Below, in pieces: positions 2,799 through 64,000 of a stretch of 64,000 nt of DNA. Each line of letters begins with the position of its first letter. Positions within the stretch are counted from its first letter, which is position 1. The notes below the pieces were generated by a model. That model worked only from the letters and a program-made list of their open reading frames with translations, was not told the origin of the DNA and made no database searches. This DNA is from Malacoraja senta (lineage: Eukaryota): the NCBI GenBank assembly GCA_038087875.1, contig CM075982.1, positions 36,766,001-36,830,000 on the forward strand. The letters are read 5' to 3'. The translations under genes were made by a program, and so were the position numbers.

Positions 2799-3512
2799 AA
2801 AGAAAAATACTTCTCACTGCCATGTACAAGAGATACGGAATACCTTTGCAACAGGTTTAGGTTCCAGGTTATTCTTGTCATGTGGATTTAGCCCAGTTTA
2901 TTACTGGCCAGAGCACCCTACCACTGACAGTGGTACAGTGAAATGATTGGTTTGCATGCTATACAATCAAATTAGATAATAGTATACATAAATACAATCA
3001 AGCCAAATTAATGTACATTAAAGGGCTGTCCCACTGCGGTGACCTAATCCGCGAGTTCAGAAGAGTGTCTTCAACCTTCAAGCTCGAGGGCACTCGCCTG
3101 GAAAACCTCGAACTGGATCGACCGTCAGCGACGAAACCGCGAGCTGGATCGACCGACCGCACGCACGCACACACATATACAAACGCATCGCAAAGGCGGG
3201 GGCCAGGGAAAGCGGGGGAGCGCTGTCTGAAATTCACACCCGCGATGAAGAGGAAGGTAAAAGGCGGTTGCACAGTGTATAAGTCCTTTAGAGAGCGTGG
3301 GGGAGGGGAGGGGGAGAGAGAGAAGGGGAAAAAGGGAGGGGGGAGGGGGGGAAGGGAGGGTGGAAGTGAAGGGGGGGAGGGGGGGAGGAAAGGGGGGGAG
3401 GAAGGGGGGGAGGGGGGGGAGGAAGGGGGGGGAAGAAGGGGGGGGAGGAAGGGGGGGGGGAGGAAGAGGGGGGGAAGGAGTGGAGACACTTTTAAGAAGT
3501 CAGATAAAGTTT

Positions 3513-3736
3513 TAAAGAAGGAACTGCAGATGCTGGAAAATCGAGGGTACACAAAAATGCTGGAGAAACTCAGCGGGTGCAGCAGCATCTATGGAGCGAA
3601 GGAGATAGGCAACGTTTCGGGCCGAAACCCTTCTCCAGTCTGAAGAAGGGTTTCGGCCCGAAACGTTGCCTATCTCCTTCGCTCCATAGATGCTGCTGCA
3701 CCCGCTGAGTTTCTCCAGCATTTTTGTGTACCTTTA
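3513..3736. mobile_element. Penelope-derived fold-back element (near-perfect 187-bp palindrome, 3546-3732)
   Basis: Arms are reverse complements about 3639, with one visible mismatch near the centre; TSD ataaagttt at 3504-3512 and 3737-3745. Confidence 0.9.
3640..3667 (+). ncRNA. Minimal type-I hammerhead-ribozyme-like core
   Basis: CUGAAGA-A-GGG(UUUCGG)CCC-GAAAC-GUU; palindromic ACGU stem III; stem I only ~2 bp. Confidence 0.6.
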
Positions 3737-4974
3737 ATAAAGTTTAGCGGGCATTTTACCTAATGGTCGGTTTTCCTTGGTCCTGAAAACTCCAATGAGC
3801 CAATTAAAATGCCCGGTCAGCGAAGGAGATTGCCTACGGCTGCCCCCAACTGCCTGTAAATACATAGCGACCCCACTCCACTGCACTACGAGTTCAAAAG
3901 AACCATGCCAACCAATTTTTACTCATGGAAAAATTTTCAGCATGCTGAAAATTTTTCCACAACCTAGCTGAGGCCGCGAGTATGCGGGAACTTCCCTCGA
4001 GCATGAAGGAGAGTTCCAGTGACCTCATAGGACCTCCTAGGGCCACGTGTCGACCATGCTGCGAGTTTGAGTCGAGGGTAAACTCATCTAAACTCGCAGA
4101 TTAGGTTGCCGCAGTGGGACAGCCCCTTTAGGGTGGAAGATAGAGTTCATAATATAGTTCTTAGTATATCATAACAATTTCAGAGAAAGTACGATGTTCG
4201 CAACAAGGTAGAATCCTTTGATCACTGTACCCTAGCTTATGGAAGGGCAGTTCAGAAGCCTGATACGGAGGAGTAGAAGCTGTTCCCACGTCTGGTGGTG
4301 CTCTCTTTCAAGCTTCTTAATCTTCTGCCTGACTGCAGTGGGGTCAAGGAGAAATGACTGAGGCGGGATTATGTTGGCTGCTTTTCTGAGGCAGCATGTA
4401 GAAATGAGGAATTGTAGATGGAGTCGGTGGTAGGGTGCCCTGGCCTGTGTGATAAACTAGGCTGAATCCACAACTCTGTCATTTTTTGCGGTTTTGGGCA
4501 GAGCTGTTCCCAAACCAAGCTGTGATGCAGTCGTCAAAGTCTGTTAGTCATTGGAGATGTGCCAAATTTCCTCAGCTCCTGAGCAAGCAGGTGTGTTGGT
4601 GTGTCTTCCTGCTGTCGCTTCAATGTGATTGCTCCACGAAAGATCATTGGTAATATTTACACAAAGGAACGAAGCTGTCAACCATTTCCACTTCGGTACC
4701 ATTGATGCTGATCGAGGCATGTACCCCATCACGCTTCCCGAGATCGATAATTAGCTGCTTCATTTTGCTGACATTGAGGTTGTCCTGACACCATGTTATT
4801 AATAAGTTCTCTATCGCATTCCTGTACTCCTTCTCGTCATTTTTTCACGCTCCAGCACACCGCAGTGGTGTCATCTGCAAACTTGTGGATGAGTTAGTTT
4901 ACTTTTCTGCAGTCGTGAATGTATAGGGGACCGAGAACCCATTCCTGCAGGCCACTGATGATGAGAATGAGGAA

Positions 4975-5812
4975 CGATGCCGAGGAAGAGAGGGGCGCCG
5001 TCGAGTATGGCTGCCCAGACTGCAGCTGTCCGTCCTTTTCACCCTCTAAAATTTTTTAGTATGTTAAAAGTGTTGTTTTTGGAGGTTTTCTAGTCTTTTT
5101 ATTTGAGGGGGGAAACTTTTTTTTCTCAGTCCCTACCTGGTCGGAGATGCGGTTTTCCTCCGAGCTGCATCTTCGCCCCTTCCTCGCGGCCTACCAACGG
5201 GACTGGAGCGGCGTTTCCTGCCGGGACCGGCAAGAACTTCAGCTTCGGCGCAGCGCTGAAGCACCATCGCGGAGTGGGCAATGCCTTATCGAGGGTCGCC
5301 GCGTGGTAAGCTTCGGAGTGCTGCGACCGCCGACTCCAACATCGCGGAGCTGTGCGGTCTGCGGAACGTCCAGCCGCGGCGGCGCTTACTTTCAAACTCC
5401 GCGGAGCCTGGGATCTCTCATCGAGATCGCCAATGTCGGAGCTCCGACCAGCGCGGCCTGTGGACTAAGGGAGCCGCGGTATCGGGTAGGAGGCGGCCGT
5501 TCCAGACACTCCAAGCCGCTGAGAGTGTTCTCCTGACGCCGGAGCTCCATCATCCGGCGAGAGGGCCTGAAACATCAGGTCACCGTTGCGGCGACTGCGG
5601 AGGCCTCAATAGGCCCGACCATGGGTGAACAAGAGGAAGAGGACTGGACTCTGTTGCCTTCCCTCACAGTGGGAACCATTGTGGGGGATGTTTTTATGTT
5701 TGGTGTTAAATTCTTCTTTAATGTTGTGTCTTATTTTTATTGGTGTGCTGCAAAATGGCAATTCAAATTTCACTACACCAATGGGTGTATGTGACAATAA
5801 ATGTCCTTGTCC
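4975..5812 (+). mobile_element. GC-rich non-autonomous retroposon family, copy 2
   Basis: Same conserved blocks as copy 1; tail aatttcactacacc..gtatgtgacaataaatgtccttgtcc. Confidence 0.75.
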
Positions 5813-7874: not shown

Positions 7875-8655
7875 GGGTGGCGCCACCGCAGTGGCTGCCT
7901 AACCCGCAGCTGTTAGTCCTTTCAACCTTTTTGTTATTTTTAATGCGTCTAAATGTATGTTTTAAATGTTTCTTAGTACGTCTTATGTTCGGGGGGGGGT
8001 GAATAGGGCGAAACCGTTTTTCAGTCACTTACCTGGACGGAGATGCGTCTTTTCCCCATGGCGCATCTCCCCCACCTCCCCCCTCGCGGCCTACCAACTG
8101 GATTGGCGCGGCCTTTCCTTTCCAGCCAGAGCTTCAGCTGCGCAGCGCTGAATTATCTTCACGGAGCAATTCCTTGCCGGGGATCGCCTGTGTTCGAGCT
8201 CCGGAGTGTTGGGCCTGCTGACTTTAACACCGTGGAGCTGTGGTTTGCGGTGCTTCTAGCAGCGGACAGCGCTGACTTTAATATCGCAGAGGAAGGCAAT
8301 CCCTTGCCAGGGATCGCCAGTGTTGGAGCTCTGTCCAGCTCGGCCTGTGGACTTCAGAAGCCGGGGCCGATTCAAAATCTCCAAGCCACGAGTGTGTTCC
8401 GATCCATTCCGACGCCGGAGTTTCGATCATCCCAGCGAGAGGGCCTGTACATCGGACCGTCCATAGCGGCGACTGCAGAGGGTTCAAAGGCCCCGACCAC
8501 GGGGGAACAAAGAGGAAGATGACTGAACTTTATTGCCTTCCATCACAGTTAGGAATGGTGATTCCGCTGTGGTGGACGTTTATGTTAAACTCTATCGTGT
8601 AATGTGTTCTTTTTACTTGTATGGCTGTATGGTAACTCAAATCTCACTGTACCAA
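7875..8655 (+). mobile_element. GC-rich non-autonomous retroposon family, copy 3
   Basis: ggtggcgccacc..ggctgcc 5' block; gccttccatcacag..ccgctgtggtgg; tail aaatctcactgtacc. Confidence 0.75.
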
Positions 8656-9794
8656 TGGAGACCATGGATAGATGGAACAGAGAACCTATCCATGTTCTCC
8701 AACAATGCTGACTGGCCCGCTGAGTTACTCCTGCACTCTGTGCCCAGTTTGTGTAATCTCTCCTCAATCCTTTGAGAGCAGACAATTGCATACTCCCTTC
8801 TCAGTCAATATACTTTTCCTAAGATTATGTGCTGAGGTGTGGTCTAACTAGGGCTTTCCAATTGATCATTGGAGGTCCCTCCATGTAGTCCCTTCCTTAA
8901 GATGAAAAGTTCAACATTCCAATAGCTTTTCTGATCATTTTGGAATCTGTCCAATCATTTTAACGATGTATAGTTCCTGTACTGCTTCAAACTTTTCATC
9001 CATTCTTTTTAGGTCGAAAGAGGATGAGCTCTTACTGTCTCAATTTAAATGCATTTCTCATTGATTTATCGAATGATTTAATCTTATAATATGTCATTAT
9101 AATTTCAGGTTTTTAATCCACACATAGGTCTGCCTTTCTGTGGGTCAAGAATCTTGATTACTCGGCTTTCTATCTGAACAGTTTATAAATACCAGGATTC
9201 GTTTCAGCTCCAGTGGTGGTCCTTGAAGAACACATCATAACCATTCTATCTATTTTGAACACTTAATTAAACGATAATATTACGATGGCTGTTAGATAAA
9301 TATTCATGAAGTGCTAGGATGCTGAGTAAATCTAACACATTATTAACCAGCTCATTACCAAGTATAACATGGGCTTGTCCCCATGTTGATACTCAAAAGG
9401 TAGTGTGCAAAAACCACCATCCCGAATAGCAGAAATTTATACAATTTCTGGCATGTCACATTCAAAATGCAACTCAAATTTCACTGTACCTTAATTGGTA
9501 CATGTGACAATTAAATTGAATCTTGAATCTTCAAAATGAAATAGTTTCTCAGTAATATTTTCCTGCCAAGATTATGTTTCCCCAGTTTCTTTATTTAAGC
9601 ATTGTGCCACTTCACAGCCAATGCAAAAGTCTTGTACACAATTTCTGCCAGTTTCAAATCCTTCCCATTTCTTTATTTCTGTCTTTAAAGGTAAAGCACT
9701 TAACCTTCTTTAAAAGGTCATGTTTCCTTATAGATCCTATTATTGATTATTCAACTTTAATGATTAAAGCATTATTGTCTCCAACATTTTGGAT

Positions 9795-12459: not shown

Positions 12460-12625
12460 CACGTCTCTTATTATACCGGAGCAGCTAATGGAATAAGCGA
12501 GTTCGAAATAACTTACCAGGATCGCATCTCTATATATGCTGTTATGATGACCCAGTGTAGGATGGTGTCATTTAGCGCTCCATTCTCTAGGATCATATCT
12601 GTAGCGCTAAATGGGATTTTATTGC
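12460..12625 (+). mobile_element. Solo terminus related to the 62327-63768 element
   Basis: TCTCTT-N22-AATAAGCGAGTT, the same bipartite motif as the ends of the HTRA2-carrying element; internal inverted catttagcgct/agcgctaaatg. Confidence 0.45.
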
Positions 12626-13969: not shown

Positions 13970-14560
13970 TATTGGTCATAACATTTCTTCCAACCTGACC
14001 CTCAATGCTGTTGTCCCTCAGGGGGGTGTGCTCAGTCCAGTGTTCTACTCCCTGTACACCTATGACTGTCTGGCAATGTGCAAAGGCAACTGATCTGTAA
14101 GTTTGCCAATTATACTATTATTGTGGAACAGATCAACAATGATGAGATAAGGCGCAAGAAAGAAACATGAACTTTTTGACATGGTGTCAGGACAACAATC
14201 TAGCCTTTAACATCAGCAATACTAAAGAGTTGTTAGTTGACCCAAGGAAACAAGGGGGTGAACACAACTGTTTCCTCATCAACAAATAGAGAAGGTCGAC
14301 AGCTACAAGTTTCTAGGCATCCACATCATCATTGACAACCTAAACTGGTCCCATCACACTGATGTGGTGATCAAGAAAGCCTATCCATCAGTCTATTTAC
14401 TTTCTTAGGCATCTCGGAAGATGTGCCATGCCCAAGAGGATTCTCTTAACTTCCACAGATGTGCATTGTAGCCTTGTGTGGCAACTGCCCTGCTCTTGAC
14501 CGTCTGAACATGCAGAGTGTGAACACAGCTCAGTTCATCACTTCTTTCCATCCAGTCCAT
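13970..14560 (+). mobile_element. Rex1/Babar RT fragment
   Basis: ISSNLTLNAVVPQGGVLSPVFYSLYTYDC; WCQDNNLAFNISNTKELLVD. Confidence 0.85.
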
Positions 14561-14579
14561 CTTCACATCATACACATGA

Positions 14580-15050
14580 TGAATATTCTCAGACACCTCA
14601 GAAAATATATATGCCAATGCACTTTCTTGATCACCACATCAATATAATGGGACCAGATTGGGTTGCTGGTGAAATGGTTGCCTAGGAACTTGAAACTGTC
14701 AACCATTACAAAACCAGCTCCATCTTTAAGAACAGGATTGTGTTTACTCCTGCAGTTCCATGGGTCAACAACCAACTCTTTCATCTTGGTGACATTATGG
14801 GCTAGATTGTTCTAACACCATACTACAAGGTATCAGGTCTCTTTCTTGTACTCCGTCTCATTATTACTGATCCGGTTGATAAGAGTTATTATTGGCAAGG
14901 TGGCACTCTACTTGGCCATACAGTCATGGGTGTACATATATTAGAGCAAGAAACTGAGCAAACAACTCGGTGGAGCATCCGTTTTAAGGGTCAGAGTCAA
15001 TGTTATGAGCATTTCTAACTGAATGAGGTCTGTCGGTCAGGAAGTAATGT
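14580..15050 (-). mobile_element. Rex1/Babar RT fragment (inverted relative to neighbour)
   Basis: MKELVVD..VDSFKFLG..WSHYIDVVIKKVHWHIYFLRCL. Confidence 0.85.
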
Positions 15051-18672: not shown

Positions 18673-19422
18673 CAGGTTGAACCGGCACCCTCGGATCCAG
18701 AGCCTTTCTGGATTACCCGCTTTTCCGGACAGAGGTCACGTGATAATGAAACAATATCCCCCCTGGCCAGCTAAAAAACACCCCTCCGGTGTCTCCAAAG
18801 CATCCTGGAGTGCCGGAAACTTAAATAAAACTAAATATACTAAAGATGGTCGAACACCATCTCCCCGGCCATTTAGAACCCCAGCTTCCAACCACAAGGT
18901 GTTTCCAACCACGCAGTCCGGTGACACAGCTATTGTTGTGGCTCGCGTTGTAGCCCCTGGGGATAGTGCTTTCTCACTGTGGGGGTCCCTCCCCTCTAAC
19001 CTGCTGCTGTTTCTTGTTGTCGGCAGTGGCTTTGTCCGCTCTACACTCGACCGCCGCCGTCTTCTTCTCCCGTCGCTCTGTCCAGTCGGCATCTTCCCCG
19101 CCTCCTCCTTCCCTCCCCTCCTTCTCACCCCTCCCTTCAAGGCGCTGACGTACTCCAACTTCGAAGCGACAGCAGGTGAAAGGAGAGGGAGTCCCACAGT
19201 GACCAAGCCCGAATGGCAGCGGCTCAAAGAAAGCACTGTCCCCAAGGGCTACAACGTGAGCCGCAACCCAGCCGTGTTACCAGACCGGGCGGTGGTTCTA
19301 CCTTGAGAGTCGAGAGTGGGGTCGGAAGCCGGAGCTGTAAGCGGCTGGGGATGGATCAGCAGGTCCGTCCACTATAGTGGAAATTGGTTATAAGTGGATC
19401 CATTAAAAATGTGGGTTTACTG
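18673..19422. mobile_element. Non-autonomous Tigger/pogo-like fold-back DNA element
   Basis: TA|CAG...CTG ends; internal inverted repeat (gctcgcgttgtagcccctggggatagtgctttc / gaaagcactgtccccaagggctacaacgtgagc); related copy at 61900-62270. Confidence 0.55.
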
Positions 19423-23040: not shown

Positions 23041-24462
23041 CAGTGCATTCAGAAAGTATTCAGACCCCTTCACCTTTTCCACATTTTGTTACGTTACAGC
23101 CTTAATCTAAAATGGATTAAATTCATTTTTTTTAAATCATCAATCTACACACAATACCCCATAATAAAAAAGCGAGAACAGGTGTTTAGAATTTTTTTGC
23201 AAAGTAATAAAAAAGAAATAACTGAAATATCACATTTACATAAGTATTCAGACCCTTTACTCAGTACTTTGTTGAGACAGCCTCAAGTCTTCTTGGGTAT
23301 GAGGCTACAAGCTTGTCACACCTGTATTTGGGTAATTTCACCCATTCTTCTCTGCAGATCCTCTCAAGTGTCAGGTTGGATTGGGGGGGGGGGGGGCGTC
23401 GATGCAGCACTATTTTCAGGTCTCTCCAGAGATGTTCGATCGTTTCAAGTCCGGACTCTGGCTGGGCCACTCAAGGACATTCACAGACTTGTCACGAAGC
23501 CACTCCTGCTTTGTCTTGGCTGTGTGCTTAGGGTTGTTGTCCTGTTGGAAGGTGAACCTCCGCCCCAGTCTGAGGTCCAGAACGCTCTGGAGCAGGTTTT
23601 AATCAAGGTTCTCTCTGTACTTTGCTCCGTTCATCTTTCTCTCGATCCTGACTAGTCTCCCAGTTCCTGCCGTTGAAAAACATCCCCACAGCATGATGCT
23701 GCCACCACCATGTTTCATCACGTCTGGTTTCCTCCAGACGTGATGCTTGGCATTCAGGCCAAAGAGTTCAATCTTGGTTTCATCAGACCAGAGAATCTTG
23801 TTTCTCATGGTCTGAGAGTCTTTAAGGTGCCTTTTAGCAAACTCCAAGCGGGATGTCATGCGCCTTTTACTGAGGAGTGGCTTCCGATCGGCCACTCTAC
23901 CATAAAGGCCTGATTGGTGGAGTGCTGCAAATATAGTTGTCCTTCTGGAAGTTTCTCCCATCTCCACAGAGGAACTCTAGAGCTCTGTCAGCGTGACCAT
24001 CGGGTTCTTGGTCACCTCCCTGACCAAGGCCCTTCTTCCCCGATTACTCAGTTTGGCCGGGCGGCCAGCTCTATGAAAAGTCCTGGCGTTTCCAAAGTTC
24101 TTCCATTTAAGAATGGCGGAGGCCACTGTGCTCTTCTGGACCTGCAATTCTGCAGAAATTGTTTTATACCGTTCCCCAGATCTGTGTCTTGACACAATCC
24201 TGTCTCGGAGGTCTACGGACAATGACTTCGTCTTCATGGCTTGGTTTTTGCTCTGACATGCACTGTCAACTGTGGGACCTTATATAGACAGGTGTGTGCC
24301 TTTCCAAATCATGTCCAATCAATTTAATTTACCACTGGTGAACTCCAAACAAGTTGCAGGAACATCAAGGGTAATCAATGGAAACAGGATGAACCCAAGC
24401 TCAATTTTGAGTGTCATAGCAAAGGGTCTGAATACTTATGTAAGTGTGATATTTCAGGGTTT
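23041..24462 (-). mobile_element. Tc1-family (DD34E-type, long IR/DR TIR) transposon, decayed transposase
   Basis: TA|CAGTGCATTCAGAAAGTATTCAGACCC left end; [65 protein letters not shown]; frameshifts; right TIR truncated by L1-like tail. Confidence 0.95.
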
Positions 24463-31549: not shown

Positions 31550-32320
31550 TTAGGTGGACACAAAATGCTGGAGTAACTCAGCGGGACAGGCAGCATCTCT
31601 GGAGAGAAGGAATGGGTGACGTTTCGGGTCGAGACACTTCTTCAGACTGATGTCATGGGAGTGGGCGGGACAATGATAGAATGCAGTTGGAGACAGTAAG
31701 ACTGGTGGGAGAACTGGGCAGGGGGAGGGGATGGAGAGAGAGGGAAAGCAAGGGCTATTTGAAGTTAGAGAAGTCAATGTTCATACTGCTGGGGTGGAAG
31801 CTACCCAAGCAAAATATGAGGTGCTGTTCCTCCAATTTGTGCTGGGCCTCACTCTGACAATGGAGGAGGCCCAGGAAAGAAAGGTCAGATTGGGAATGGG
31901 AGGGGGATTAAAGTGCTGAGCAACCAAGAGATCGGGTAGGTTAAGGCAGAACGAGCAGAGGTGAAACTCTGCCTCACCTGAAAAGACTGTCGGGGTCCTT
32001 GGAATGAGTCGAGGGGGAGGTAAAGGGACAGGTGCTGCATCTCCTGAGGTTGCAGGGGAAAGTACCTGGGGAGGGGGTGGTTTGGGTGGGAAGGGACGAA
32101 TTGACCAGGAAGTTGCAGAGGGAAACAGTCTCTGCGGAAAGCAGAAAGGGGTGGAGATGGGAAGATGTGGCCAGTAGTGGGATCCCGTTGGAGGTGGCAA
32201 AAGTGTTGGAGGATTATATGCTGTATGCGACGGCTGATGAGGTGGAAGGTGAGGACTCTGTCCTTGTTGTGAACGGGGGGGGGGGGGGGGGAGGGGGAGC
32301 AAGAGCTGAGCTGCGGGATA
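31550..32320 (-). mobile_element. Penelope-like element 3' part (GIY-YIG region, internally deleted) plus terminal repeat
   Basis: ggacccc..gtcttttcaggtgaggcagagtttcacct; ctttcctgggcctcctccattgt; tail with CTGAAGA..GAAACGTC. Confidence 0.85.
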
Positions 32321-33217: not shown

Positions 33218-34078
33218 GCAAAGGGACACAGAGTGCTGCAGTAACTCAGCATATCAGGCAACATCTGTGGTGAATATGGATAGGCGATGTTGCGGGTCGC
33301 CGAATCCATACTTGGTCTTGCCGAAGTACAGGAGGTCACTTCGGGAACATCGGATGCAGTAGACGAGGTTAGAGAAGGTGTACGTGGACCTCTGTCTCAC
33401 CTGGAAGAAATGCTGGGGTCCCTGAATAGAGGCGAGAGAGGCGATAAAGGGACAGGTGTTACATCTGCAATTGTAGGGCAAAGTACCTGGGGAGGGGGCG
33501 ATTTGGGTGGGAATGGATGAGTGATCCAAGAAGTGGTGGAGGGAGCAGTCTCTGTGAAAGGGGTGGAGATGGGAAGATGTGACTGGTGGTGGGATCACAT
33601 TTGAGGTGATGGAAATAACGGAAGATGATATGTTGGATTGGGAGGCTGGTGGGGTGTCAGTCTAGGACCAGGGGAACTCTATCCCTGTTGCATCTGGGGA
33701 GGAGAGTGAGCGAAAGCAGAACTACGAGACAGAAGAGATGCAGGTGGGGGAATCCATCCATAACAAAAGGGACAAACCACGTTTACCAAAGAAAAGTCTT
33801 CTCTCACACCTGCTTTTATTGCTAGCCTTTGTTCCAACCATCTGCCTATCAAAAAGAAAACCTGCCCATGTCCACCTGTTACTTGCCACCCTTTCTCCTG
33901 CCTCTCCCCTTGTCCACCTTTCTTCTCCCCGCCCCCAAAAATAATCAGTCTGAAGTGGCTTGACCCAAAATGTTACCAATCCATGTTCTCCAGAAATGCT
34001 GCCTGACCTGCTGAGTTACTCCAGTACTTTATGTCCCTTTGATTATTAATCAGCATCTGCAGTTCCTTGTTTCTGCAT
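33218..34078. mobile_element. Penelope-like GIY-YIG fragment bracketed by inverted terminal repeats
   Basis: Minus ORF IQGPQHFFQVRQRSTYTFSNLVYCIRCSRSDLLYFGKTK; tails in opposite orientation at both ends; flanking repeat atccttaaatc. Confidence 0.85.
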
Positions 34079-43254: not shown

Positions 43255-44180
43255 TAAGATGGAACTGCAGATGCTAGTTTAAACTGAAGATAAACATAAA
43301 ATGCTGGAGTAACTCAGCTAGACAGGCAGCATCTCTGGAGGGAAGGAATGGGTGACAATAGACATTAGGTGCAGGAGTAGGCCATTTGGCCCTTCGAGCC
43401 AGCACCGCCATTCACTGTGGTCATGGCTGATCATCCACAAACAGTACCCCGTTCCTGCCTTCTCCCCATATCCCTTGACTCTGCTATCTTTAAGAGCTTT
43501 AAATCTCTCTTAAAAGCATCAAGAGAATCAGCCTCCACTGCCTTCTGAGGCAGAGAATTCCACAGATTCACAACTCCCTGGGTGAAAAAGTTTTTTCTCA
43601 TCTCCATTCTAAATGGCCTACCTCTTATTCTTAAACTGTGGCCCCTGGTTCTAGACTCGCCCAATATTGGGAATATGTTTCCCGCTCTAGAGTGTCCAAT
43701 CCCATAATAATCTGAAAATGTTTCAATAAGATTCCCTCTCATCCTTCTAAATTCCAGTATATTCAAGCCCAGTCGCTCCATTCTATCAACATACGACAGT
43801 CCCGCCATCCCGGGAATTAACCTCGTGAACCTACGCTGCACTCCCTCAATAGCAAGAATGTCCTTCCTCAAATTTGGAGACCAAAACTGCACACAATACT
43901 CCAGGTGTGGTGTCACTAGGGCCCTGTGCAACTACAGAAGGACTTCTTTGCTCCTATATTCAACTCCTCTTATTATGAAGGCCAACATGCCATTAGCTTT
44001 CTTCACTGCCTGTTATACCTGCATGCTTACTTTCAGTGACTGATGAACAAGGCCCTCAGATCTCATATTTCAGGTGGAGACCCTTCTTCAGACCCTATCT
44101 CGACTCGAAATGTCACCCATTCCTTCTATTCAGAGATGTTGCCTGTCCCGCTGTGTTACTTCAGCATTGTGTCTATCTTT
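43255..44180. mobile_element. Penelope-derived fold-back element containing a CR1 insertion
   Basis: Left arm 43255-43356, right arm 44070-44180; flanking taagtttt duplication. Confidence 0.75.
43357..44065 (-). mobile_element. Young CR1 3' end
   Basis: PHLEYCVQFWSPNLRKDILAIEGVQRRFTRLIPGM..RTRGHSLRI..FFTQGVVNLWNSLP. Confidence 0.95.
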
Positions 44181-46235: not shown

Positions 46236-47072
46236 CATTTTGTTTTTTTTAGTATGTTTTAGTGTATGGTTTTAATGTTTCTTGGTGTGTCTTGTGTGGG
46301 GGGTGGTGTGGGGGGGTAAGGGGGAAACCTCCATGGAGAGGCGACTTTTTCCATGTCGCCTCCCCCGTGGCCTAACAACAAGGATCGGCGCGGCTGTTCC
46401 CGGAGACGCGCCTGGGGCTTCAGCTGCGGGTGCAGCGTGGACACTCGGCGTGGAGCGGGCGAGCCCTCGCTGGGGCTCGCCGGAGGGGAGCGCTCCGTTC
46501 GCTGGCCCGCGGCAGCCTGAAGCCGCGGTCTGCAGAGCTGCAGCTAGCGCGGCGTCTGCAGCCCGGGATCTCACGTTGGGGACCCGGGGAGAAGAAGAAG
46601 CCACCACCGCCGGCCCTCGGCCAACTTCTACCGCGGGCGCGGCGGCGACTTACCATCAGGAGCGGGGTCCCTCGCTGGGGATCTCTGGAGGGGAGCTCCG
46701 ACTGCCGGCCCTGCAGTCTACGGTGCTTCTGGCTGCGGCACGAACTTTAAATCTCCAACCGCCGGCCTGCACCAACTTGAAGCTGCGGTCTCCGGTGGGG
46801 AAGAGCCGATTCTGGACTTACCTGGACTTTTTACCTTGTCTGCACATCTGGATGCCCACAGCGACGGCTGCGGAGGGTTGAGGTCCCGACCATGGGGGAA
46901 AATGGAGGAGAACTGGCCAAATTTTTGTGCCTTCCACCACAGTGATGAATGCGGTGGGGGATGTTTGTGTTAATTTTTTGATGTGTTTTTGTGTGTTATT
47001 TTTCATTGTACCGCTGCTGGCAAATTCATTTCACTTGCACTTTATGTGCAATGTGACGAATAAAACTGATTG
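46236..47072 (+). mobile_element. GC-rich non-autonomous retroposon family, copy 4
   Basis: Inserted in CR1 tail (gacatt duplicated); ggggaaac, gcctaac, ccgaccatggggg, gccttccaccacagtg, tail atttcacttgcac..gtgacgaataaa. Confidence 0.75.
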
Positions 47073-56559: not shown

Positions 56560-57915
56560 CATAGAAACATAGAAAATAGGTACAGGAGTAGGCCATTCGG
56601 CCCTTCGAGCCTGCACCACCATTCAATATGATCATGGCTGATCATCCAACTCAGTATCCTGTACCTGCCTTCTCTCCATACCCCCTGATCCCTTTAGCCA
56701 CAAGGGCCACATCTAATTCCCTCTTAAATATAGCCAATGAACTGGCCTCAACTACCTTCTGTGGCAGAGAATTCCACAGATTCACCACTCTGTGTAAAAA
56801 ATGATTTTCTCATCTCGGTCCTAAAAGACTTCCCCCTTATCCTTGAACTGTGACCCCCTTGTTCTGGACTTCCCAACATCGGGAATAATCTTCCTGCATC
56901 TAGCCTGTCCAACCCCTTAAGAATTTTGTACGTTTCTATAAGATCCCCCCTCAATCTTCTAAATTCTAGCGAGTACAAGCCGAGTCTATCCAGTCATTCT
57001 TCATATGAAAGTCCTGCCATCCAAGGAATCAGTCTGGTGAACCTTCTCTGTACTCCCTCTATGGCAAGAATGTCTTTCCTCAGATTAGGAGACCAAACCT
57101 GTATGCAATACTCCAGGTGTGGTCTCACCAAGACTCTGTACAACTGCAGTAGAACCTCCCTGCTCTTATACTCAAATCCTTTTGCTATGAATGCTAACAT
57201 ACCATTCGCTTTCTTCACTGCCTGCTGCACCTGCATGCCTACTTTCAATGACTGGTGTACCATGACACCCAGATCTCGTTCCATGGGTGGACATGGGGAT
57301 GGGGACTGGACTTTGTGCCTTCCCCCACAGTGGGAGCCATTGTGGGGGGATGTTTTTATGTTTAATGTTAAACTTCTTAATGCTATGTTGTATTTTTATT
57401 AGTGTGCTGCAAGGACATCAGAATTTCCCCTGAATAAGGGGATTAATAAAGTAAAAATCAAATCAAATCAAATCAAATCTCCCCTTTTCCTAATCGGCCA
57501 CCATTCAGATAATAGTCTACTTTCCTGTTTTTGCCACTAAAGTGGATAACCTCACATTTATCCACATTATACTGCATCTGCCATGCATTTGCCCACTCAC
57601 CCAACCTATCCAAGTCACCTTGCAGCCTCCTAGCAATCCTCCTCACAGCTAACAATGCCCCCTAGCTTCGTGTTATCCGCAAACTTGGAGTTGTTGCATT
57701 CAATTCCCTCATCCAGATCATTAATATATATTGTAAATAGCTGGGGTCCCAGCACTGAGCCTTGCGGTACCCCACTAGTCACTGCCTGCCATTCTGAAAA
57801 GGACCCGTTTACTCCTACTCTTTGCTTCCTGTCTGCCAGCCAGTTTTCTATCCACATCAATACTGAACCCCCAATACTGTGTGCTTTAAGTTTGCATACT
57901 AATCTCTTATGTGGG
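56560..57915 (-). mobile_element. Young CR1 LINE RT + 3' end
   Basis: [32 protein letters not shown]; RPHLEYCIQVWSP; (tagaaaca)n tail. Confidence 0.95.
57281..57479 (+). mobile_element. 5'-truncated copy of the GC-rich retroposon family inside CR1
   Basis: ccatgggtg..gccttcccccacagtggg..gaatttc..aataaag + (atcaa)n; matches 5620-5810. Confidence 0.8.
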
Positions 57916-58729
57916 ATATTGATTTACAAATAAAACTTCGTAACATCCAAAAAATGTGTATAAATAACAGATCTAGAACAAAGAAATGGTAAAGTTATAA
58001 AAGATGCCCAAACTACACATTGGAATATATTAATTTCATACATCAGGGCTCTCCCTTAACTTTTTTTCCCTGTTGCCAGCCGGGCAACCATGGCAGCTTT
58101 TTAGGTTGCCAAATTACAGTTTAGGTGGTCATTTAAGATGGCTTGCATGACGCATGCAATAATGTGCTCGGACGAAGTGCGTAGTTACCAGTCGGAATTA
58201 TACTCAATGAAGCATTCACATATTATTTCTGCTTCAAATAAAGTCACAAACTAAACATATTCACCAATGAAGACATGATATATCCCACAATGACATGCAG
58301 CAAAATTATAAGACAGTATCTCAACTCTTTTTACACGTTGCAATTAATGCAATTTCTACTAGTTCTTTCCTCTTCCAAACAACAATGTGGTTGGATTATT
58401 CAGCGTATGATCAACCTGTGTCAATAAATCCTGGACCATGGTAAAATATATGCGTACGTATAGTTGTGATTGTTGCTCATTAACGAACTACAGTACTGAT
58501 ACTCCATATTAAGAGCATTGATTTGCCGTTAAAATGAATTCTGTAATAACGTGTCAACGGCAGCAGTGACAATCGAACACTGCGGTTTTAATGTTTCACG
58601 TGTTCACAATTTAATTAATCCATCTTTATGTATTAAAATAAGTAACATTGGGAATCAAAACACATTTGATTGCATTCCGTTATCAAACATAGTCAAAGTT
58701 CGCTCTGAAGACATTTCCAGCACAATAGG

Positions 58730-59600
58730 GTCAGGGAGGGAGGTGTGTGTGAATTAGTGCGGGGTGGATAGATGGCGGGGGTTGGGGGGGGGGGGGGGGG
58801 TTAGAAGGCAGTCGGTGCAGAATGGATGGATTGAGGCAGGTGAATTAGTACGTGTTGGTTGGAGTAGGTAAAATTGTGAGGGGAGAGCACCGGGGATGTC
58901 AGTGGTGTTAAATGGGGGGGGGGGGGGGATTCAGTACGGGATGGATGGGGGTAAACAAAAGTGCTGGAGAAACTCAGCGGGTGAGGCAGCATTTATGGAG
59001 CGAAGGAAATAGGCAACGTTTCGGGTCGAGACCCTTCTTCAGACTGTTCCCCCCATTCTTCTTGAATGGGAGGATCAGTACAGGATGGATGGAGCGGGAG
59101 ATCAGCGCAGGATGAATGGGGGGGGGGTCAGTACAGTGTGGATCGGAGGGTCTGTGCAGGATGAATGGGGGATCACTACAGGAAGAATGAGGGGAAGGGG
59201 GGAAGGTGCAGGGTAAATGGAGGGTGGGTCAGTATGGGATGAATGCGTGGATTAGTACAGGATGGATGGGGGATCAGTACAGCATGGATGGAGGAGAAGT
59301 GGAGGATGGATGGGAAAGGGGTAAGTACAGGGTGAATTGGGGAACCAGTGTAGGATGGATGATGGGGGGGGGGGGGGTGGCTGGAGAATCAGTGCGAGGT
59401 GGATAGGGTGATCAGCGCAGGATGAATAGATGGGGGGGGGGTAGATGGGGAGGGGAGCACAGGGGATGTCAGTGAGGACTGAATAGAGGCGGGAATGGGG
59501 ATCAGTGCGGGATGGAGTGGAGGGGTCCCAGGATAAGGGGGTGGAGGGGGCGTACAAGAGGGAGAGAGAGAGGGAGAGGGGGGGTGGGGAGGAAGGAAGG
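58730..59600 (+). repeat. G-rich degenerate minisatellite (gggatcagtacaggatggatgg-like units)
   Basis: Repeated RTCAGTRCRGGATG units separated by G runs. Confidence 0.7.
59015..59042 (-). ncRNA. Minimal hammerhead-ribozyme-like core in a Penelope tail
   Basis: Reverse strand CUGAAGA-A-GGG(UCUCGA)CCC-GAAAC-GUU intact. Confidence 0.55.
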
Positions 59601-59710
59601 TCAGCGCTCCTCGGACAACATCGCCCCGCTGCCTTGGCCGTTGGGAACTCCTCGCCACCGCCTCCCTCCTCCGCCAGCCAACAGCAAGGTGCGGGGCCGG
59701 CAGTGCAGCT

Positions 59711-59738
59711 CAGAGATCCTATAGCTATAAGATCTTTG
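59711..59738. mobile_element. 28-bp palindromic micro-MITE
   Basis: cagagatcctatag|ctataagatctttg (12/14 inverted match); 8-bp TSD gtgcagct at 59703-59710 and 59739-59746. Confidence 0.75.
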
Positions 59739-60939
59739 GTGCAGCTGCTTCAGACGAGTCGGAGCGAATGACGGGCCCCGCACAGCGGCAGCGAACAGCA
59801 GCTCCATCTCTTCCTCCCGCCCTGATAAGGGCCTCTGCTTGCAAACCCGCTAACAGCGATAACCGCTTTCAAAACAAATCCTCCCGCACGCCGAGGCCTC
59901 CCCCTCCATCCCTCAGAGTGCGGGAGGGTTTGTTTCGAAAGCGGTTATCGCCGTTACCGGGTTTGCAAGCAGAGGCCCTTATCAGGGCAGGCGGGGTGCG
60001 GGAGGAGGAGGAGATGGAGCCGCTGTCGCGGCCACTGCTGCCGCTGTGCGAAGCCCATCATTCGCTCCGACCCTTCCTCACCCCGCACCTAGTATCTTTG
60101 CCCCGCAATACAGCCATCACTGCCGACACAAAACATCGCGTTCCTTTTCTCCAGAGATGCTGCCTGACCCACAGAGTTACTCCAGTTTTTTGTGTCTCTC
60201 TTCGGTACAAACCAGTATTTGGTTGCCAAGCCGGGCAAAATGACTCGGTGTTTAGGTTGCCCGGCGGCGCTTTGAGTGGTCAGTGGCACCCGGGCAACCT
60301 CTAATTTCGACCCCTGTACATATGACCATGGGTTGAGAAGTGGGGCATCTTTGTTAACACATGAAAAAAATCAAATCCAAGCATTTATGACTAACTCCTA
60401 AATGATCAAACAACTATGATCAATAAGGAAAGTATATCCACATGCCAAAAATGACAACAGGAAATTTGACAGCAGAAAAAAAATGTGCAAACAAGTAAGC
60501 TTCAGTTTCACAGTGCTCCAAGTACACGACAGGTTGGTATTGTCTAATCCAATTTGAGGATTTTGACCACAGCAGGCAGCAATTCAACTGTGGAGAAATT
60601 CTTCATCATTTGAATTTAAGATACATAAAATATCTATTGCAACATAAGAAATGTTTCTCAAAATAGTCTTTCTTTGCTATTCCTGATTTTGGTTCCGAAC
60701 TACTGGAGTTTTAATCAGGGAAATATAGCTCCTCAAAAATACTGTGGCCACCATCAAACTATACAGTAGTTAGTAATGTATTTAAAAGTGAGTTTGATCC
60801 ATAGTTTTAATTTATTGATTTTTTCTTTGTTTTTTTATGTTATCTATGAGTATTATGTTTTCAAGCTTGTTATGCTGTTGCAAGTAAGAATTTCATTGTT
60901 CTGTTGTCGGTACGTATGACAATTAAAAACTCCCGACTC

Positions 60940-61899: not shown

Positions 61900-62270
61900 T
61901 GAAGGAGGGTCTGGGGGTGGTGGGGTAGAAGGGAGCGGCGTCCCGGAGAAAGAGCTGTCTCCAGGGGCTAAAACATGAGCCCCACCAACAGCCATGTCAT
62001 CTAAACAAGCGGTGGGCAAAGAAGGGCTCGCTAGTGTACTCTGTAAGTCGGGAGTGGGGTTGGAAGCCAGGGATGGGTTGGCAGGTCATTTCATTCACAT
62101 TCAGTTCGTTTTATATTAGTTTCTGACACTCCATGGTGCTTTAGAGACATGGGACGAGTGTCATTAGCAGGCCAATAGTATATTATTGTTTCATCATCAC
62201 GTGACCTGCTGGCCCAGAAAAATGGATAATCCAGAAAGGCTCGGGAACGACAGTGCTGAAAAAAATCATT
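61900..62270. mobile_element. Half copy of the Tigger-like fold-back family
   Basis: tcatcacgtgacct..ggataatccagaaaggc matches the reverse of 18690-18830; ggagtggggttggaagcc matches ~19313. Confidence 0.55.
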
Positions 62271-62903
62271 TATACCATGGATAAGCATTGGTAAACTTTG
62301 AGATTTGACATTTTTTTATTTTGTACTAGTTCAAAATTCAGGATTCAATTTAATTGTCACATGTACCAATTAATAGTTCTCTTAACTCTATAAAGTTCAG
62401 ACTTAATAAGTGTGTTTGGTATTCCAAAAAACGTAAGGAATCATGGGATTTGTCAAAGGTCATTCGCGAAAAAAAGCGAACGGGGTGCCAAGTAGTAGGA
62501 GAGCAGGGTGTAACAGCGAGAGGGCGCAAATGCGAGTGGGAGGCAGGGGGAGAGACTGGCCCAGCGGAGAGACGGTGAGAGGTGGGGGAGAGAGAAGGGG
62601 GCTTTGTGTTTTGCTCACAGATGTGTTTAGTTCAACATTCCGCGGGGAGTGCCGGAGTTTGCACGTTGGTTGCAGAGGCGGGCAATGTCCCCCAGTCCCT
62701 CCCTCCAGTTTGGGCCGGGGGATGGGGGCGGAGGGATTGTCCTAGCACCGGGGAGTTCTTGCGGAGACGGGGTGTCCGGGACCTGCAGTGAAGCCGCAAT
62801 AGCGAGTTCCTCTCTCCACGTCGCCTCTCCCCCTATCCCCCAGTCCGTATCTCCCCCACTCCTATCCCTCTATCTCCCCTCCTCCCCCACTCTCCCTCCT
62901 CAC

Positions 62904-63150
62904 CTCCCGAGGATCTCGATGTAAACCACCAGCGCCCCCTTCTCCACCACGTCGGCGATGAAGTTGTACTTCAGACGGGGGCTGTCGGGGGGGGGGGGGG
63001 GGGGGGGGGATGTGCCGAGCAGCCTGGAGCCGGGGGAGTGGGAGGGAGAGGCCGAGGCAGAGTCCTTGCCCCGGGTCCCGCTACTCCCCCTCCACCCAGG
63101 CCCGGAACAGCAATGCCGCCGCCCCAGACCCAGCCTCACCTTTACCCGCA
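62904..63150 (-). pseudogene. HTRA2: HTRA2 (Omi) exon 1 fragment, degenerate
   Basis: [29 protein letters not shown]|GTGAG vs human [28 protein letters not shown], same phase-2 intron position in the Arg codon; upstream [17 protein letters not shown]-like segment with frameshifts and a TAG; no downstream exons seen. Confidence 0.85.
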
Positions 63151-63166
63151 GACAAGCATCACTCTA

Positions 63167-63337
63167 TAGGAAGGAACTGCAGATGCTGGTTTACACCGAA
63201 AGGAGAAACAACGTGCTGGAGTAACTCAGCAGGACAGGCAACATCTTTGGAGAAAAGGAATAGGTGACTTTTCAGATCAGGACCCTTCTCCAGAGATGTT
63301 GCCTGACCCACTGAGTTACTGCAGCATTTTGTGTGTA
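63167..63337. mobile_element. Penelope-derived fold-back element inside the HTRA2 fragment region
   Basis: ggaactgcagatgctgg..ggagtaactcagc / ctgagttactgcagcattttgtgt. Confidence 0.8.
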
Positions 63338-64000
63338 TCCCCGTTGATGACAGGGGGTTAACCGACAGCCACTGGATAAGGCGAGAGGTGCCGCTGACGG
63401 TCCCCGGCCCGTCGGGGAACGGGTTCCTCGGGAGTTGGAGCAGAGTTGAGCTGGAGTTAGCGCTGGCTGTAAGTCCGTGTCCCGTCACCCCGGACATCTC
63501 CGGCCACCCCCGGACATGGATGGGACATTCGGGAGGGAACGGGAGTGAGATCACCCGTTTGCACTTGTTCTACATTATTTAACTCCAGTAGCAATTCAAC
63601 AGCGCTTGCAGCACCGGAAACCCAGGTTCAATCCTGACTACAGATGAAACGCAGGTCTGTATACACGCAGCAGCTCAGCTGTTTATCACAAATTATTTAT
63701 GACCTGGGCATGCGCAGTCGGAATACCAAACTCGCTTATTGCAATCCTTCCGATGTGAAAGAGAACAAATCTGGAACATTGTGGAACACAGTGGTCTTAG
63801 TAGCTTCACTTATTTTGTGATATAATGAACAAAGAGAGATGTGGATTGTTTTGTGATCATGGTTTTTGTGACCATTTCCCATTTAATCATTTTGGTATGT
63901 GCCACAGGGTAGTTAAAGCGATTTAGTGTAACTGCAAACATTACATTTCACACACCAAACAAGGCTAACACAATACCAACCAATTAGGTAACATCATTCC

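What the first reader, a model, noticed from the sequence alone, without database searches (positions are those of the whole stretch)
62327..63768. HTRA2 exon 1 captured at DNA level inside a TIR-bounded element (Pack-type transposon candidate)
Seen: an HTRA2 exon-1 fragment (TM-like segment, [24 protein letters not shown]) retains the GT donor at the conserved phase-2 position plus purine-rich intron-like sequence, so it is not a retrocopy. No exon 2 (HPF.GRE..SNGSGF) was found in the ~62 kb downstream. The fragment carries frameshifts, a stop and a one-codon deletion. It is enclosed by inverted bipartite termini (inner box 19/21 identical), and a partial terminal box sits at the cargo junction (62796). 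After removing a retroposon tail at the left tip, the flanks attttgtac/atctggaac match only 6/9, a weak TSD. Inference: a non-autonomous, possibly Academ-like, element that captured the CpG-rich 5' end of HTRA2 and may have dispersed it. Such gene capture is well known in plants and less documented in vertebrates.
Basis: partly seen in the sequence, partly recalled or inferred. Interest (0 to 1): 0.75.

Follow-up and report, generated by a model that had tools for sequence, protein, structure and literature searches.

The report
Dead HTRA2 first-exon fragment, carrier unresolved
This is a broken DNA-level copy of the end of the first exon, the splice donor and the start of the first intron of the protease gene HTRA2; it lies between two short inverted repeats in repeat-rich DNA of a skate-like fish, is probably transposon cargo of a known kind, and I could not confirm which transposon type carried it.

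Summary
On the minus strand, 62903-62998 encodes the conserved end of HTRA2 exon 1. The best solved-structure match is human HTRA2 (E 1.4e-7). A GT donor follows at the position where 25 other vertebrate exon-1 ORFs also stop. Weaker collinear similarity, including the membrane-segment motifs, runs up to about 63160. The copy is dead: at least two frameshifts, one stop, one missing codon, a 22-base homopolymer run and an abundant hairpin repeat at 63167-63340. No other HTRA2 exon motif occurs in the 62 kb downstream. It is therefore neither a retrocopy nor the working gene.

The 19/21 inverted repeat (62405-62425 / 63720-63740) is real and unlikely to be chance. The rest of the terminal-repeat case is weak. 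The outer box is only 10 bases, the "third box" at 62796 is within chance, the target-site duplication is 6/9, and no second copy could be examined.

Earlier notes of this scan report HTRA2 exon-1 fragments in eight other places in this genome and call the carrier a Helitron. I found no canonical Helitron ends in this copy.

Verdict: a transposon-borne gene fragment of a known kind, already met by this scan, with the carrier type unresolved here.

The parts
62903..63160 (-). HTRA2-like 3' part of exon 1. Similarity is strong at 62903-62998 (..[28 protein letters not shown]) and weak but collinear from 62999 to about 63160 (membrane-segment motifs LGLG / GAAALL). It carries at least 2 frameshifts, 1 in-frame stop and 1 missing codon.
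62898..62903 (-). Retained splice donor GTGAGG (GT at 62903/62902), intron phase 2, at the junction position shared by other vertebrate HTRA2 exon-1 ORFs.
62803..62902 (-). Intron-like sequence after the donor, G-rich on the minus strand (GC 0.63, CpG o/e 1.17). How far the HTRA2-derived part extends is unknown because the parental locus could not be fetched.
62989..63010 (.). 22-base G run (C on the coding strand) that replaces part of the linker before DSPR and separates two reading frames. One frameshift here could also be a homopolymer length error in the assembly.
62426..62802 (.). GC-rich internal sequence of unknown origin (GC 0.59, CpG o/e 0.78). No Pfam match to its ORF, no protein relatives and no in-window copy.
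63167..63340 (.). Copy of a very abundant hairpin (MITE-like) repeat. It has dozens of copies in the window and lies exactly at the upstream limit of detectable HTRA2 similarity.
63341..63604 (.). GC-rich internal sequence with no detectable HTRA2 N-terminal similarity and no Pfam match. It holds two GC-rich hairpins (63398-63421, 63495-63518), neither followed by CTRR.
63605..63646 (+). Short fragment of another dispersed repeat (83% identical to 1967-2008). Its tRNA-like look is my own reading; no tRNA was called there.
62405..62425 (+). Left inner box of the inverted repeat (19/21 with the right box).
63720..63740 (-). Right inner box of the inverted repeat.
62374..62383 (+). Left outer box TAGTTCTCTT. 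Its first base is where homology to the neighbouring repeat fragment stops.
63759..63768 (-). Right outer box TTGTTCTCTT (9/10 with the left outer box).
62330..62373 (-). 44-base, 5'-truncated fragment of another repeat, consisting of a palindromic core and a short tandem tail. Other copies lie at 9491-9534, 5751-5801, 1143-1179 and 60879-60927. It reads as a retroposon tail abutting the left tip and is not part of the element.

Best explanation
The locus holds a dead DNA-level copy of a small HTRA2 module: about 260 bases of the 3' part of exon 1, the GT donor and at least 100 bases of intron 1. It most likely arrived as cargo of a non-autonomous DNA transposon and is one member of a dispersed family of such fragments in this skate-like genome. 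In this copy the cargo lies in a composite of about 1.4 kb (62374-63768) framed by a short, imperfect, two-box inverted repeat. The most economical reading of this copy alone is a carrier with short inverted termini. That could be a cut-and-paste element (Pack-type) or a Helitron-like element of the second group (HLE2), which also has short terminal inverted repeats. A hairpin repeat and a retroposon tail were added later. What is shown: HTRA2 identity, the retained junction, the decay, the absence of other exons, and the inverted repeat. What is inferred: that a transposon moved it, which type it was, and that it is multicopy. I put about 0.75 on 'transposon-borne captured fragment' and about 0.4 on 'carrier with these inverted termini'. 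The confidence figure below refers to the second, narrower claim.
For: HTRA2 identity and the retained donor. Frameshifts, a stop and a codon loss. No other HTRA2 exon motifs in the window. The 19/21 inverted repeat is unique in the window. An all-against-all scan for inverted pairs of at least 19/21 lying 100-2000 bases apart gave 27 clusters; by my reading of that list, every other one belongs to the hairpin repeat, to longer-armed elements or to larger palindromes, so chance pairs look rare here. The gapped score of the two ends is 37 against 19.3 +/- 3.8 for shuffles, and one shuffle in 300 reached it. The left tip at 62374 coincides exactly with the break in an unrelated repeat. Earlier scan notes list HTRA2 exon-1 fragments with the same content (exon end, donor, intron start) in eight other places of this genome, among 1201 windows noted. 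I treat this as an unchecked lead. It would imply a copy number in the hundreds; that figure is my own extrapolation and assumes a genome of a few gigabases. Animal TIR elements that carry host fragments are documented (PMC8277862). Short terminal inverted repeats of 12-16 nt are also a defining feature of HLE2 Helitron-like elements (PMC11417382).
Against: There is no convincing target-site duplication. The best case is 6/9 at one chosen length, after removing the retroposon tail; I estimate p at roughly 0.1-0.2 once the choice of length is allowed for (my own calculation, no tool call). Between the two conserved boxes the arms do not align. No second copy with the same termini could be examined. 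No related autonomous element or further terminus lies in the window; the one candidate at 12464-12503 is within chance. The 'third box' is chance-level. Four earlier follow-ups of this scan called the carrier of this cargo a Helitron. The only stem-loop next to the left box belongs to another repeat family, so the HLE2 architecture is not demonstrated either.
Confidence: 0.4

Rival explanations
1. This is a truncated or decayed copy of a canonical Helitron (HLE1) family that captured the HTRA2 exon-1 end, donor and intron start, as earlier notes of this scan concluded for other copies. On this view the inverted repeat around it is unrelated: two inverted copies of some short repeat, or a small inverted-repeat element into which the Helitron copy landed.
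For: Eight earlier notes in the same genome describe the same cargo content, and four follow-ups call the carrier a Helitron spread to hundreds of sites. These are AI notes that I did not check. Two independent captures of the same small module by two carrier types would be an unlikely coincidence. Helitrons are known for promoter and first-exon capture; the bat NUBPL case is cited from my own knowledge and was not looked up here. The composite, multi-fragment interior fits Helitron habits.
Against: In this copy no GC-rich hairpin followed by CTRR and T, and no matching A|TC start, lies between 61.5 and 64.0 kb on either strand. The only CTAG followed by T (62326-62329) sits next to an AT-rich palindrome that belongs to a separate repeat with its own copies elsewhere in the window. 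The inverted repeat is unlikely to be chance.
Confidence: 0.3
2. The fragment was not transposed. It was placed here once by double-strand-break repair (gap filling or template switching) using the HTRA2 locus as template, possibly inside a pre-existing inverted-repeat element. That is how most single-copy animal Pack-TIRs are thought to arise.
For: Single-copy Pack-TIRs in animals are reported to arise mostly by transposition-independent gap filling (PMC8277862). No target-site duplication and no second copy were seen here.
Against: Earlier notes report the same module at eight other sites of this genome (unchecked), which argues for amplification. No microhomology or parental locus could be examined.
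Confidence: 0.15
3. This is exon 1 of the true HTRA2 gene, with a very long first intron or assembly errors.
For: The exon-intron junction is intact. One frameshift lies in a 22-base homopolymer run that could be a length error. The window ends 232 bases beyond the right box, so the upstream neighbour cannot be seen.
Against: There is a further frameshift, an in-frame stop and loss of a codon inside the most conserved stretch. A hairpin repeat sits at the point where the coding similarity ends. No N-terminal similarity is detectable. None of the catalytic-domain motifs appears in 62 kb downstream.
Confidence: 0.03

Closest known systems
Pack-TIR elements of animals (Tan et al. 2021, Nat Commun, PMC8277862) and Pack-MULEs of plants
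   Same: A host gene fragment, here a 5' exon piece with its intron start, lies between inverted termini. There is no transposase, and the fragment is decayed and probably functionless.
   Different: The defining supports are missing here: no clear target-site duplication, termini not assigned to any known TIR family, and the parental locus and other copies were not examined. The inverted repeat is short (21 + 10 bases) and discontinuous.
Helitron gene capture, for example bat Helitrons that amplified the promoter and first exon of NUBPL (from my own knowledge, not looked up here). Earlier notes of this scan call this family 'Helitron carrying HTRA2 exon 1'.
   Same: The same type of cargo: first-exon end, splice donor and intron start. 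The interior is composite, and the cargo is reportedly dispersed in the hundreds.
   Different: This copy shows no 5' TC, no 3' hairpin plus CTRR and no A|T junction. It does show an inverted repeat, which canonical Helitrons lack.
HLE2 Helitron-like elements (Helentron / Helitron2; PMC11417382)
   Same: They have short terminal inverted repeats of 12-16 nt. This is the one known class that would reconcile 'Helitron' with 'inverted termini'.
   Different: The 3' stem-loop after the right repeat and the insertion between T and T are not demonstrated. The only nearby palindrome belongs to another repeat. The conserved inner boxes lie 28-31 bases inside the putative tips.

Membership tests
HTRA2 gene (functional locus) | Exon 1 end with the conserved ..[17 protein letters not shown](G/D)R and the donor at the conserved position | tested here: met
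HTRA2 gene (functional locus) | Open reading frame through exon 1 | tested here: not met
   At least 2 frameshifts, 1 stop and 1 codon deletion
HTRA2 gene (functional locus) | Downstream exons encoding the protease (His/Asp/Ser motifs) and PDZ domains | tested here: not met
   A motif scan of all six frames of the window found none in a plausible context. Sensitivity is limited to those motifs with one mismatch.
Processed retrocopy | Intron loss at the exon junction | tested here: not met
   GTGAGG and intron-like sequence follow the exon end, and no exon 2 sequence is joined to it
Pack-TIR / Pack-MULE-type element | [quoted passage not shown] | tested here: inconclusive
   Inner box 19/21, outer box 9/10, and a non-alignable spacer between them. 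The gapped score is 37 against 19.3 +/- 3.8 for shuffles.
Pack-TIR / Pack-MULE-type element | Target-site duplication directly flanking the termini | tested here: not met
   The directly flanking 8 bases match at 2/8. Only after removing the 62326-62373 piece is there a 6/9 match at one length (counted by eye from the sequence).
Pack-TIR / Pack-MULE-type element | Termini homologous to a known or autonomous TIR transposon family | not testable with these tools
   No vertebrate genome or repeat library was available. No related terminus in the window exceeds chance.
Pack-TIR / Pack-MULE-type element | Several copies with the same chimeric structure and different target-site duplications | not testable with these tools
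Canonical Helitron (HLE1) | 5' TC, and a 3' GC-rich hairpin a few bases before CTRR | tested here: not met
   Scans of 61.5-64.0 kb on both strands, and of the whole window, found no such end near the cargo.
Canonical Helitron (HLE1) | Insertion between A and T, without target-site duplication or terminal inverted repeats | tested here: inconclusive
   No ends could be defined, and an inverted repeat is present.
HLE2 (Helentron / Helitron2) | Short terminal inverted repeats (12-16 nt) | tested here: inconclusive
   A 21-base inverted repeat is present but not demonstrably terminal. The definition is taken from PMC11417382.
HLE2 (Helentron / Helitron2) | Stem-loop after the right repeat, and insertion between T and T | tested here: inconclusive
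   The only palindrome (62350-62373) belongs to another repeat family. T flanks are uninformative in AT-rich DNA.

The most novel reading that the evidence does not exclude
The HTRA2 first-exon/donor module in this cartilaginous fish is mobilised by an element with short inverted termini. This would be either an HLE2-type Helitron-like element, in which case the scan's 'Helitron' calls and this 'TIR' call describe the same family, or a second cut-and-paste carrier that acquired the same cargo. I found no paper linking Helitrons to HTRA2, or Helitron gene capture to skates. Either way it would be a high-copy vertebrate case of first-exon plus splice-donor dispersal that could seed chimeric transcripts.
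Probability: 0.2. Interest if true: 0.5.

Novelty: new member of a known kind. Interest (0 to 1): 0.3.

Why it matters
Gene-fragment capture by DNA transposons is well known in plants and bats but sparsely described in other vertebrates. A family that scatters a CpG-rich first-exon end together with a working-looking splice donor could create alternative first exons or chimeric transcripts in host genes. This copy is decayed and adds only one more instance to a family the scan has already met on other DNA of this genome. Its one distinctive point is the inverted repeat around the cargo, which raises the question of which transposon class is the carrier. That question is easily settled with the genome assembly in hand.

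Tried and rejected
No read depth, copy number, empty site or RNA evidence was obtained.

2) Protein word searches. The 87-aa sense piece returned only genuine exon-1 ORFs of other vertebrates and no paralogous decayed copies. The antisense 91-aa ORF across the intron part returned nothing. Neither result says much about copy number.

3) The search of earlier findings by sequence, for the left part, the right part and the cargo. All three were blank. I sent no further exon letters to search tools afterwards.

4) 'Third terminal box' at 62796: rejected as chance.

5) Split-repeat test. I checked whether the right flank continues the repeat that is broken at 62373, which would have given an empty-site reconstruction. 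It does not: the score is 21 against a shuffle mean of 23.

6) Possible third terminus at 12464-12503: the score of 38 is within what about 1% of random window chunks reach, so I rejected it.

7) Canonical Helitron ends near the cargo: none.

8) Pfam on ORFs of the GC-rich internal parts and of other GC-rich islands in the window: no family.

9) Rfam and tRNA scans of 61.5-64.0 kb: only sub-threshold hairpin matches on the hairpin repeat.

10) The 'Academ-like' label: nothing in the data bears on it.

The large representative protein search was not used, because no claim here rests on absence of relatives.

Full report
WHAT IS THERE

On the minus strand, 62903-62998 reads ..[32 protein letters not shown] and is followed directly by GTGAGG. 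A phmmer search of the 87-aa stop-free piece (62903-63163) against all solved structures gives human HTRA2 as the best match (E 1.4e-7). HTRA1 and HTRA3 score far weaker, at E about 0.01-0.03. The alignment shows one missing codon. A word-based protein search returned 25 ORFs of 66-153 aa from other vertebrates. They are plainly HTRA2 first exons, and every one ends at ..YIEILGR or ..YIEILDR. The reading frame is therefore closed by the intron start at the same place in many species, and the junction retained here is the conserved one (intron phase 2). This excludes a processed retrocopy.

Similarity to those first exons continues upstream, weakly but collinearly, to about 63160. The LGLG motif lies in one frame, GAAALL in another, and a ..LP..A.. 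stretch lies before the proline run. There is one in-frame stop and a 22-base homopolymer run at 62989-63010. A copy of a very abundant hairpin repeat occupies 63167-63340, exactly where the detectable HTRA2 similarity ends. Beyond it, 63341-63604 shows no N-terminal HTRA2 similarity and no Pfam domain.

No motif of the later HTRA2 exons occurs in a credible context in any frame of the window.

THE INVERTED REPEAT

The pair 62405-62425 / 63720-63740 is 19/21. The 21-mer has no other match in the window at up to three mismatches, with 0.00 expected from shuffles. I scanned the whole window for inverted pairs of at least 19/21 lying 100-2000 bases apart and found 27 clusters. By my reading of that list, apart from this pair they all belong to the abundant hairpin repeat, to longer-armed inverted-repeat elements, or to larger palindromes. 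One example is a transposase-bearing element at 23221-24458; 'Tc1/mariner-like' is my own reading of its ORFs, not a database result. Chance pairs of this quality therefore look rare here, and this one is probably a real structure.

A second 10-base box (TWGTTCTCTT) lies 21 and 18 bases further out at 62374-62383 and 63759-63768. The spacers between the two boxes do not align. A gapped comparison of the two ends scores 37 against 19.3 +/- 3.8 for shuffles, and one shuffle in 300 reached it.

THE LEFT TIP

62330-62373 is 93% identical to 9491-9534 and resembles three further in-window copies of a repeat with a palindromic core and a short tandem tail. Its homology stops exactly at 62373/62374, where the outer box begins, so 62374 is a real discontinuity.

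The other half of that repeat is not found beyond the right box, so no empty site can be reconstructed. The bases directly flanking the boxes do not match. After removing the tail, the 9-base flanks match 6/9. Once the free choice of length is allowed for, I estimate p at roughly 0.1-0.2 (my own calculation). The target-site duplication is therefore not established.

WHICH CARRIER?

Earlier notes of this scan list HTRA2 exon-1 fragments with the same content in eight other places of this genome. Four follow-ups call the carrier a Helitron that spread the fragment to hundreds of sites in skate genomes. These are unchecked AI notes, and I used them as a lead.

I tested the canonical Helitron features on this copy. 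No GC-rich hairpin followed by CTRR and T, and no matching TC start, lies within 61.5-64.0 kb on either strand. The only CTAG followed by T (62326-62329) sits beside the AT-rich palindrome of the unrelated repeat. Canonical Helitron membership is thus not met for this copy, although a truncated copy cannot be excluded.

The second group of Helitron-like elements (HLE2: Helentron and Helitron2) is defined by three features: short terminal inverted repeats of 12-16 nt, a stem-loop after the right repeat, and insertion between T and T (PMC11417382). That class would reconcile 'Helitron' with 'inverted termini'. Here, however, the stem-loop and the T|T junction are not demonstrated.

For cut-and-paste Pack-type elements (PMC8277862), the inverted repeat is present but short. 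The target-site duplication, the family assignment of the termini and the multi-copy test are unmet or untestable. Nothing bears on 'Academ-like'.

WHAT COULD NOT BE DONE

The decisive test is to align other genomic copies and see where they stop sharing sequence. I could not run it.

- The findings index gave blanks by sequence.
- Protein searches returned no paralogous copies.
- No vertebrate genome collection is among the tools.

READING AND ODDS

That this is a displaced, dead, DNA-level HTRA2 fragment is close to certain. That it is transposon cargo, one copy of a dispersed family, I put at about 0.75. This rests mainly on the recurrence reported by earlier notes and on the composite, repeat-framed structure.

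For the carrier of this copy, my odds are:

- 0.4: an element with the observed short inverted termini (cut-and-paste or HLE2)
- 0.3: a truncated canonical Helitron, with the inverted repeat being unrelated
- 0.15: a one-off repair duplication
- 0.03: the true gene

COMPARISON AND NOVELTY

Capture of a promoter or first-exon piece by DNA transposons is a known kind of event: Pack-MULEs in plants, Pack-TIRs in animals, and Helitron capture of NUBPL in bats (the last from my own knowledge). I found no paper linking Helitrons to HTRA2, or Helitron gene capture to skates. The scan has already met this cargo on other DNA of the same genome. This copy is one more decayed member. Its only distinctive point is the inverted repeat, which questions the carrier's class.

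Noticed in passing
window 23221-24458: Inverted-repeat element with 42-base arms (23221-23262 / 24417-24458) enclosing minus-strand ORFs at 23602-23976 and 23980-24279. By eye these read like Tc1/mariner transposase remnants.
   Followed up: partly
window 2881-4472: A 1.6-kb unit bounded by 48-base inverted arms (2881-2928 / 4423-4472), with a second nested pair (3018-3049 / 4099-4130). It encloses a GC-rich island with long G/R/P-rich ORFs (2942-3640) and has no Pfam match. It may be another inverted-repeat element with GC-rich cargo.
   Followed up: partly
window 61923-62256 and 18685-19001 / 19216-19365: A repeat of about 335 bases lies directly left of the finding, 66% identical to 18685-19001. 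The second locus is itself palindromic (inverted arms 18935-18974 / 19228-19267). Both copies keep a CACGTGAC motif, and the copy left of the finding also has a CCAAT motif. The nature of this repeat is unknown.
   Followed up: partly
window 5108-5784 and 8006-8658 (partly 46840-46973): A GC-rich repeat family of about 700 bases with two copies 69% identical and a partial third. Its long ORFs have no Pfam match.
   Followed up: partly
window 58600-60300: A GC-rich island (GC 0.57, CpG o/e 0.59) with strong G-skew that then reverses. It contains a 59-base inverted repeat with arms 100 bases apart (59795-59853 / 59954-60026), flanked by a further pair (59756-59776 / 60053-60073). There is no Pfam match and no similarity to the HTRA2 element.
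   Followed up: partly
window 14053-14936: Three nested inverted pairs (14053/14915, 14224/14761, 14356/14620) suggest a long degenerate palindrome of about 880 bases.
   Followed up: no
window 57633-57923 and 43434-43931: Minus-strand ORFs that by eye read like LINE reverse-transcriptase fragments. Much of the window consists of repeats.
   Followed up: no
window 31961-32244 and 33384-33656: Two copies of a 285-base repeat, 73% identical, inside GC-rich, proline-rich ORF regions.
   Followed up: no
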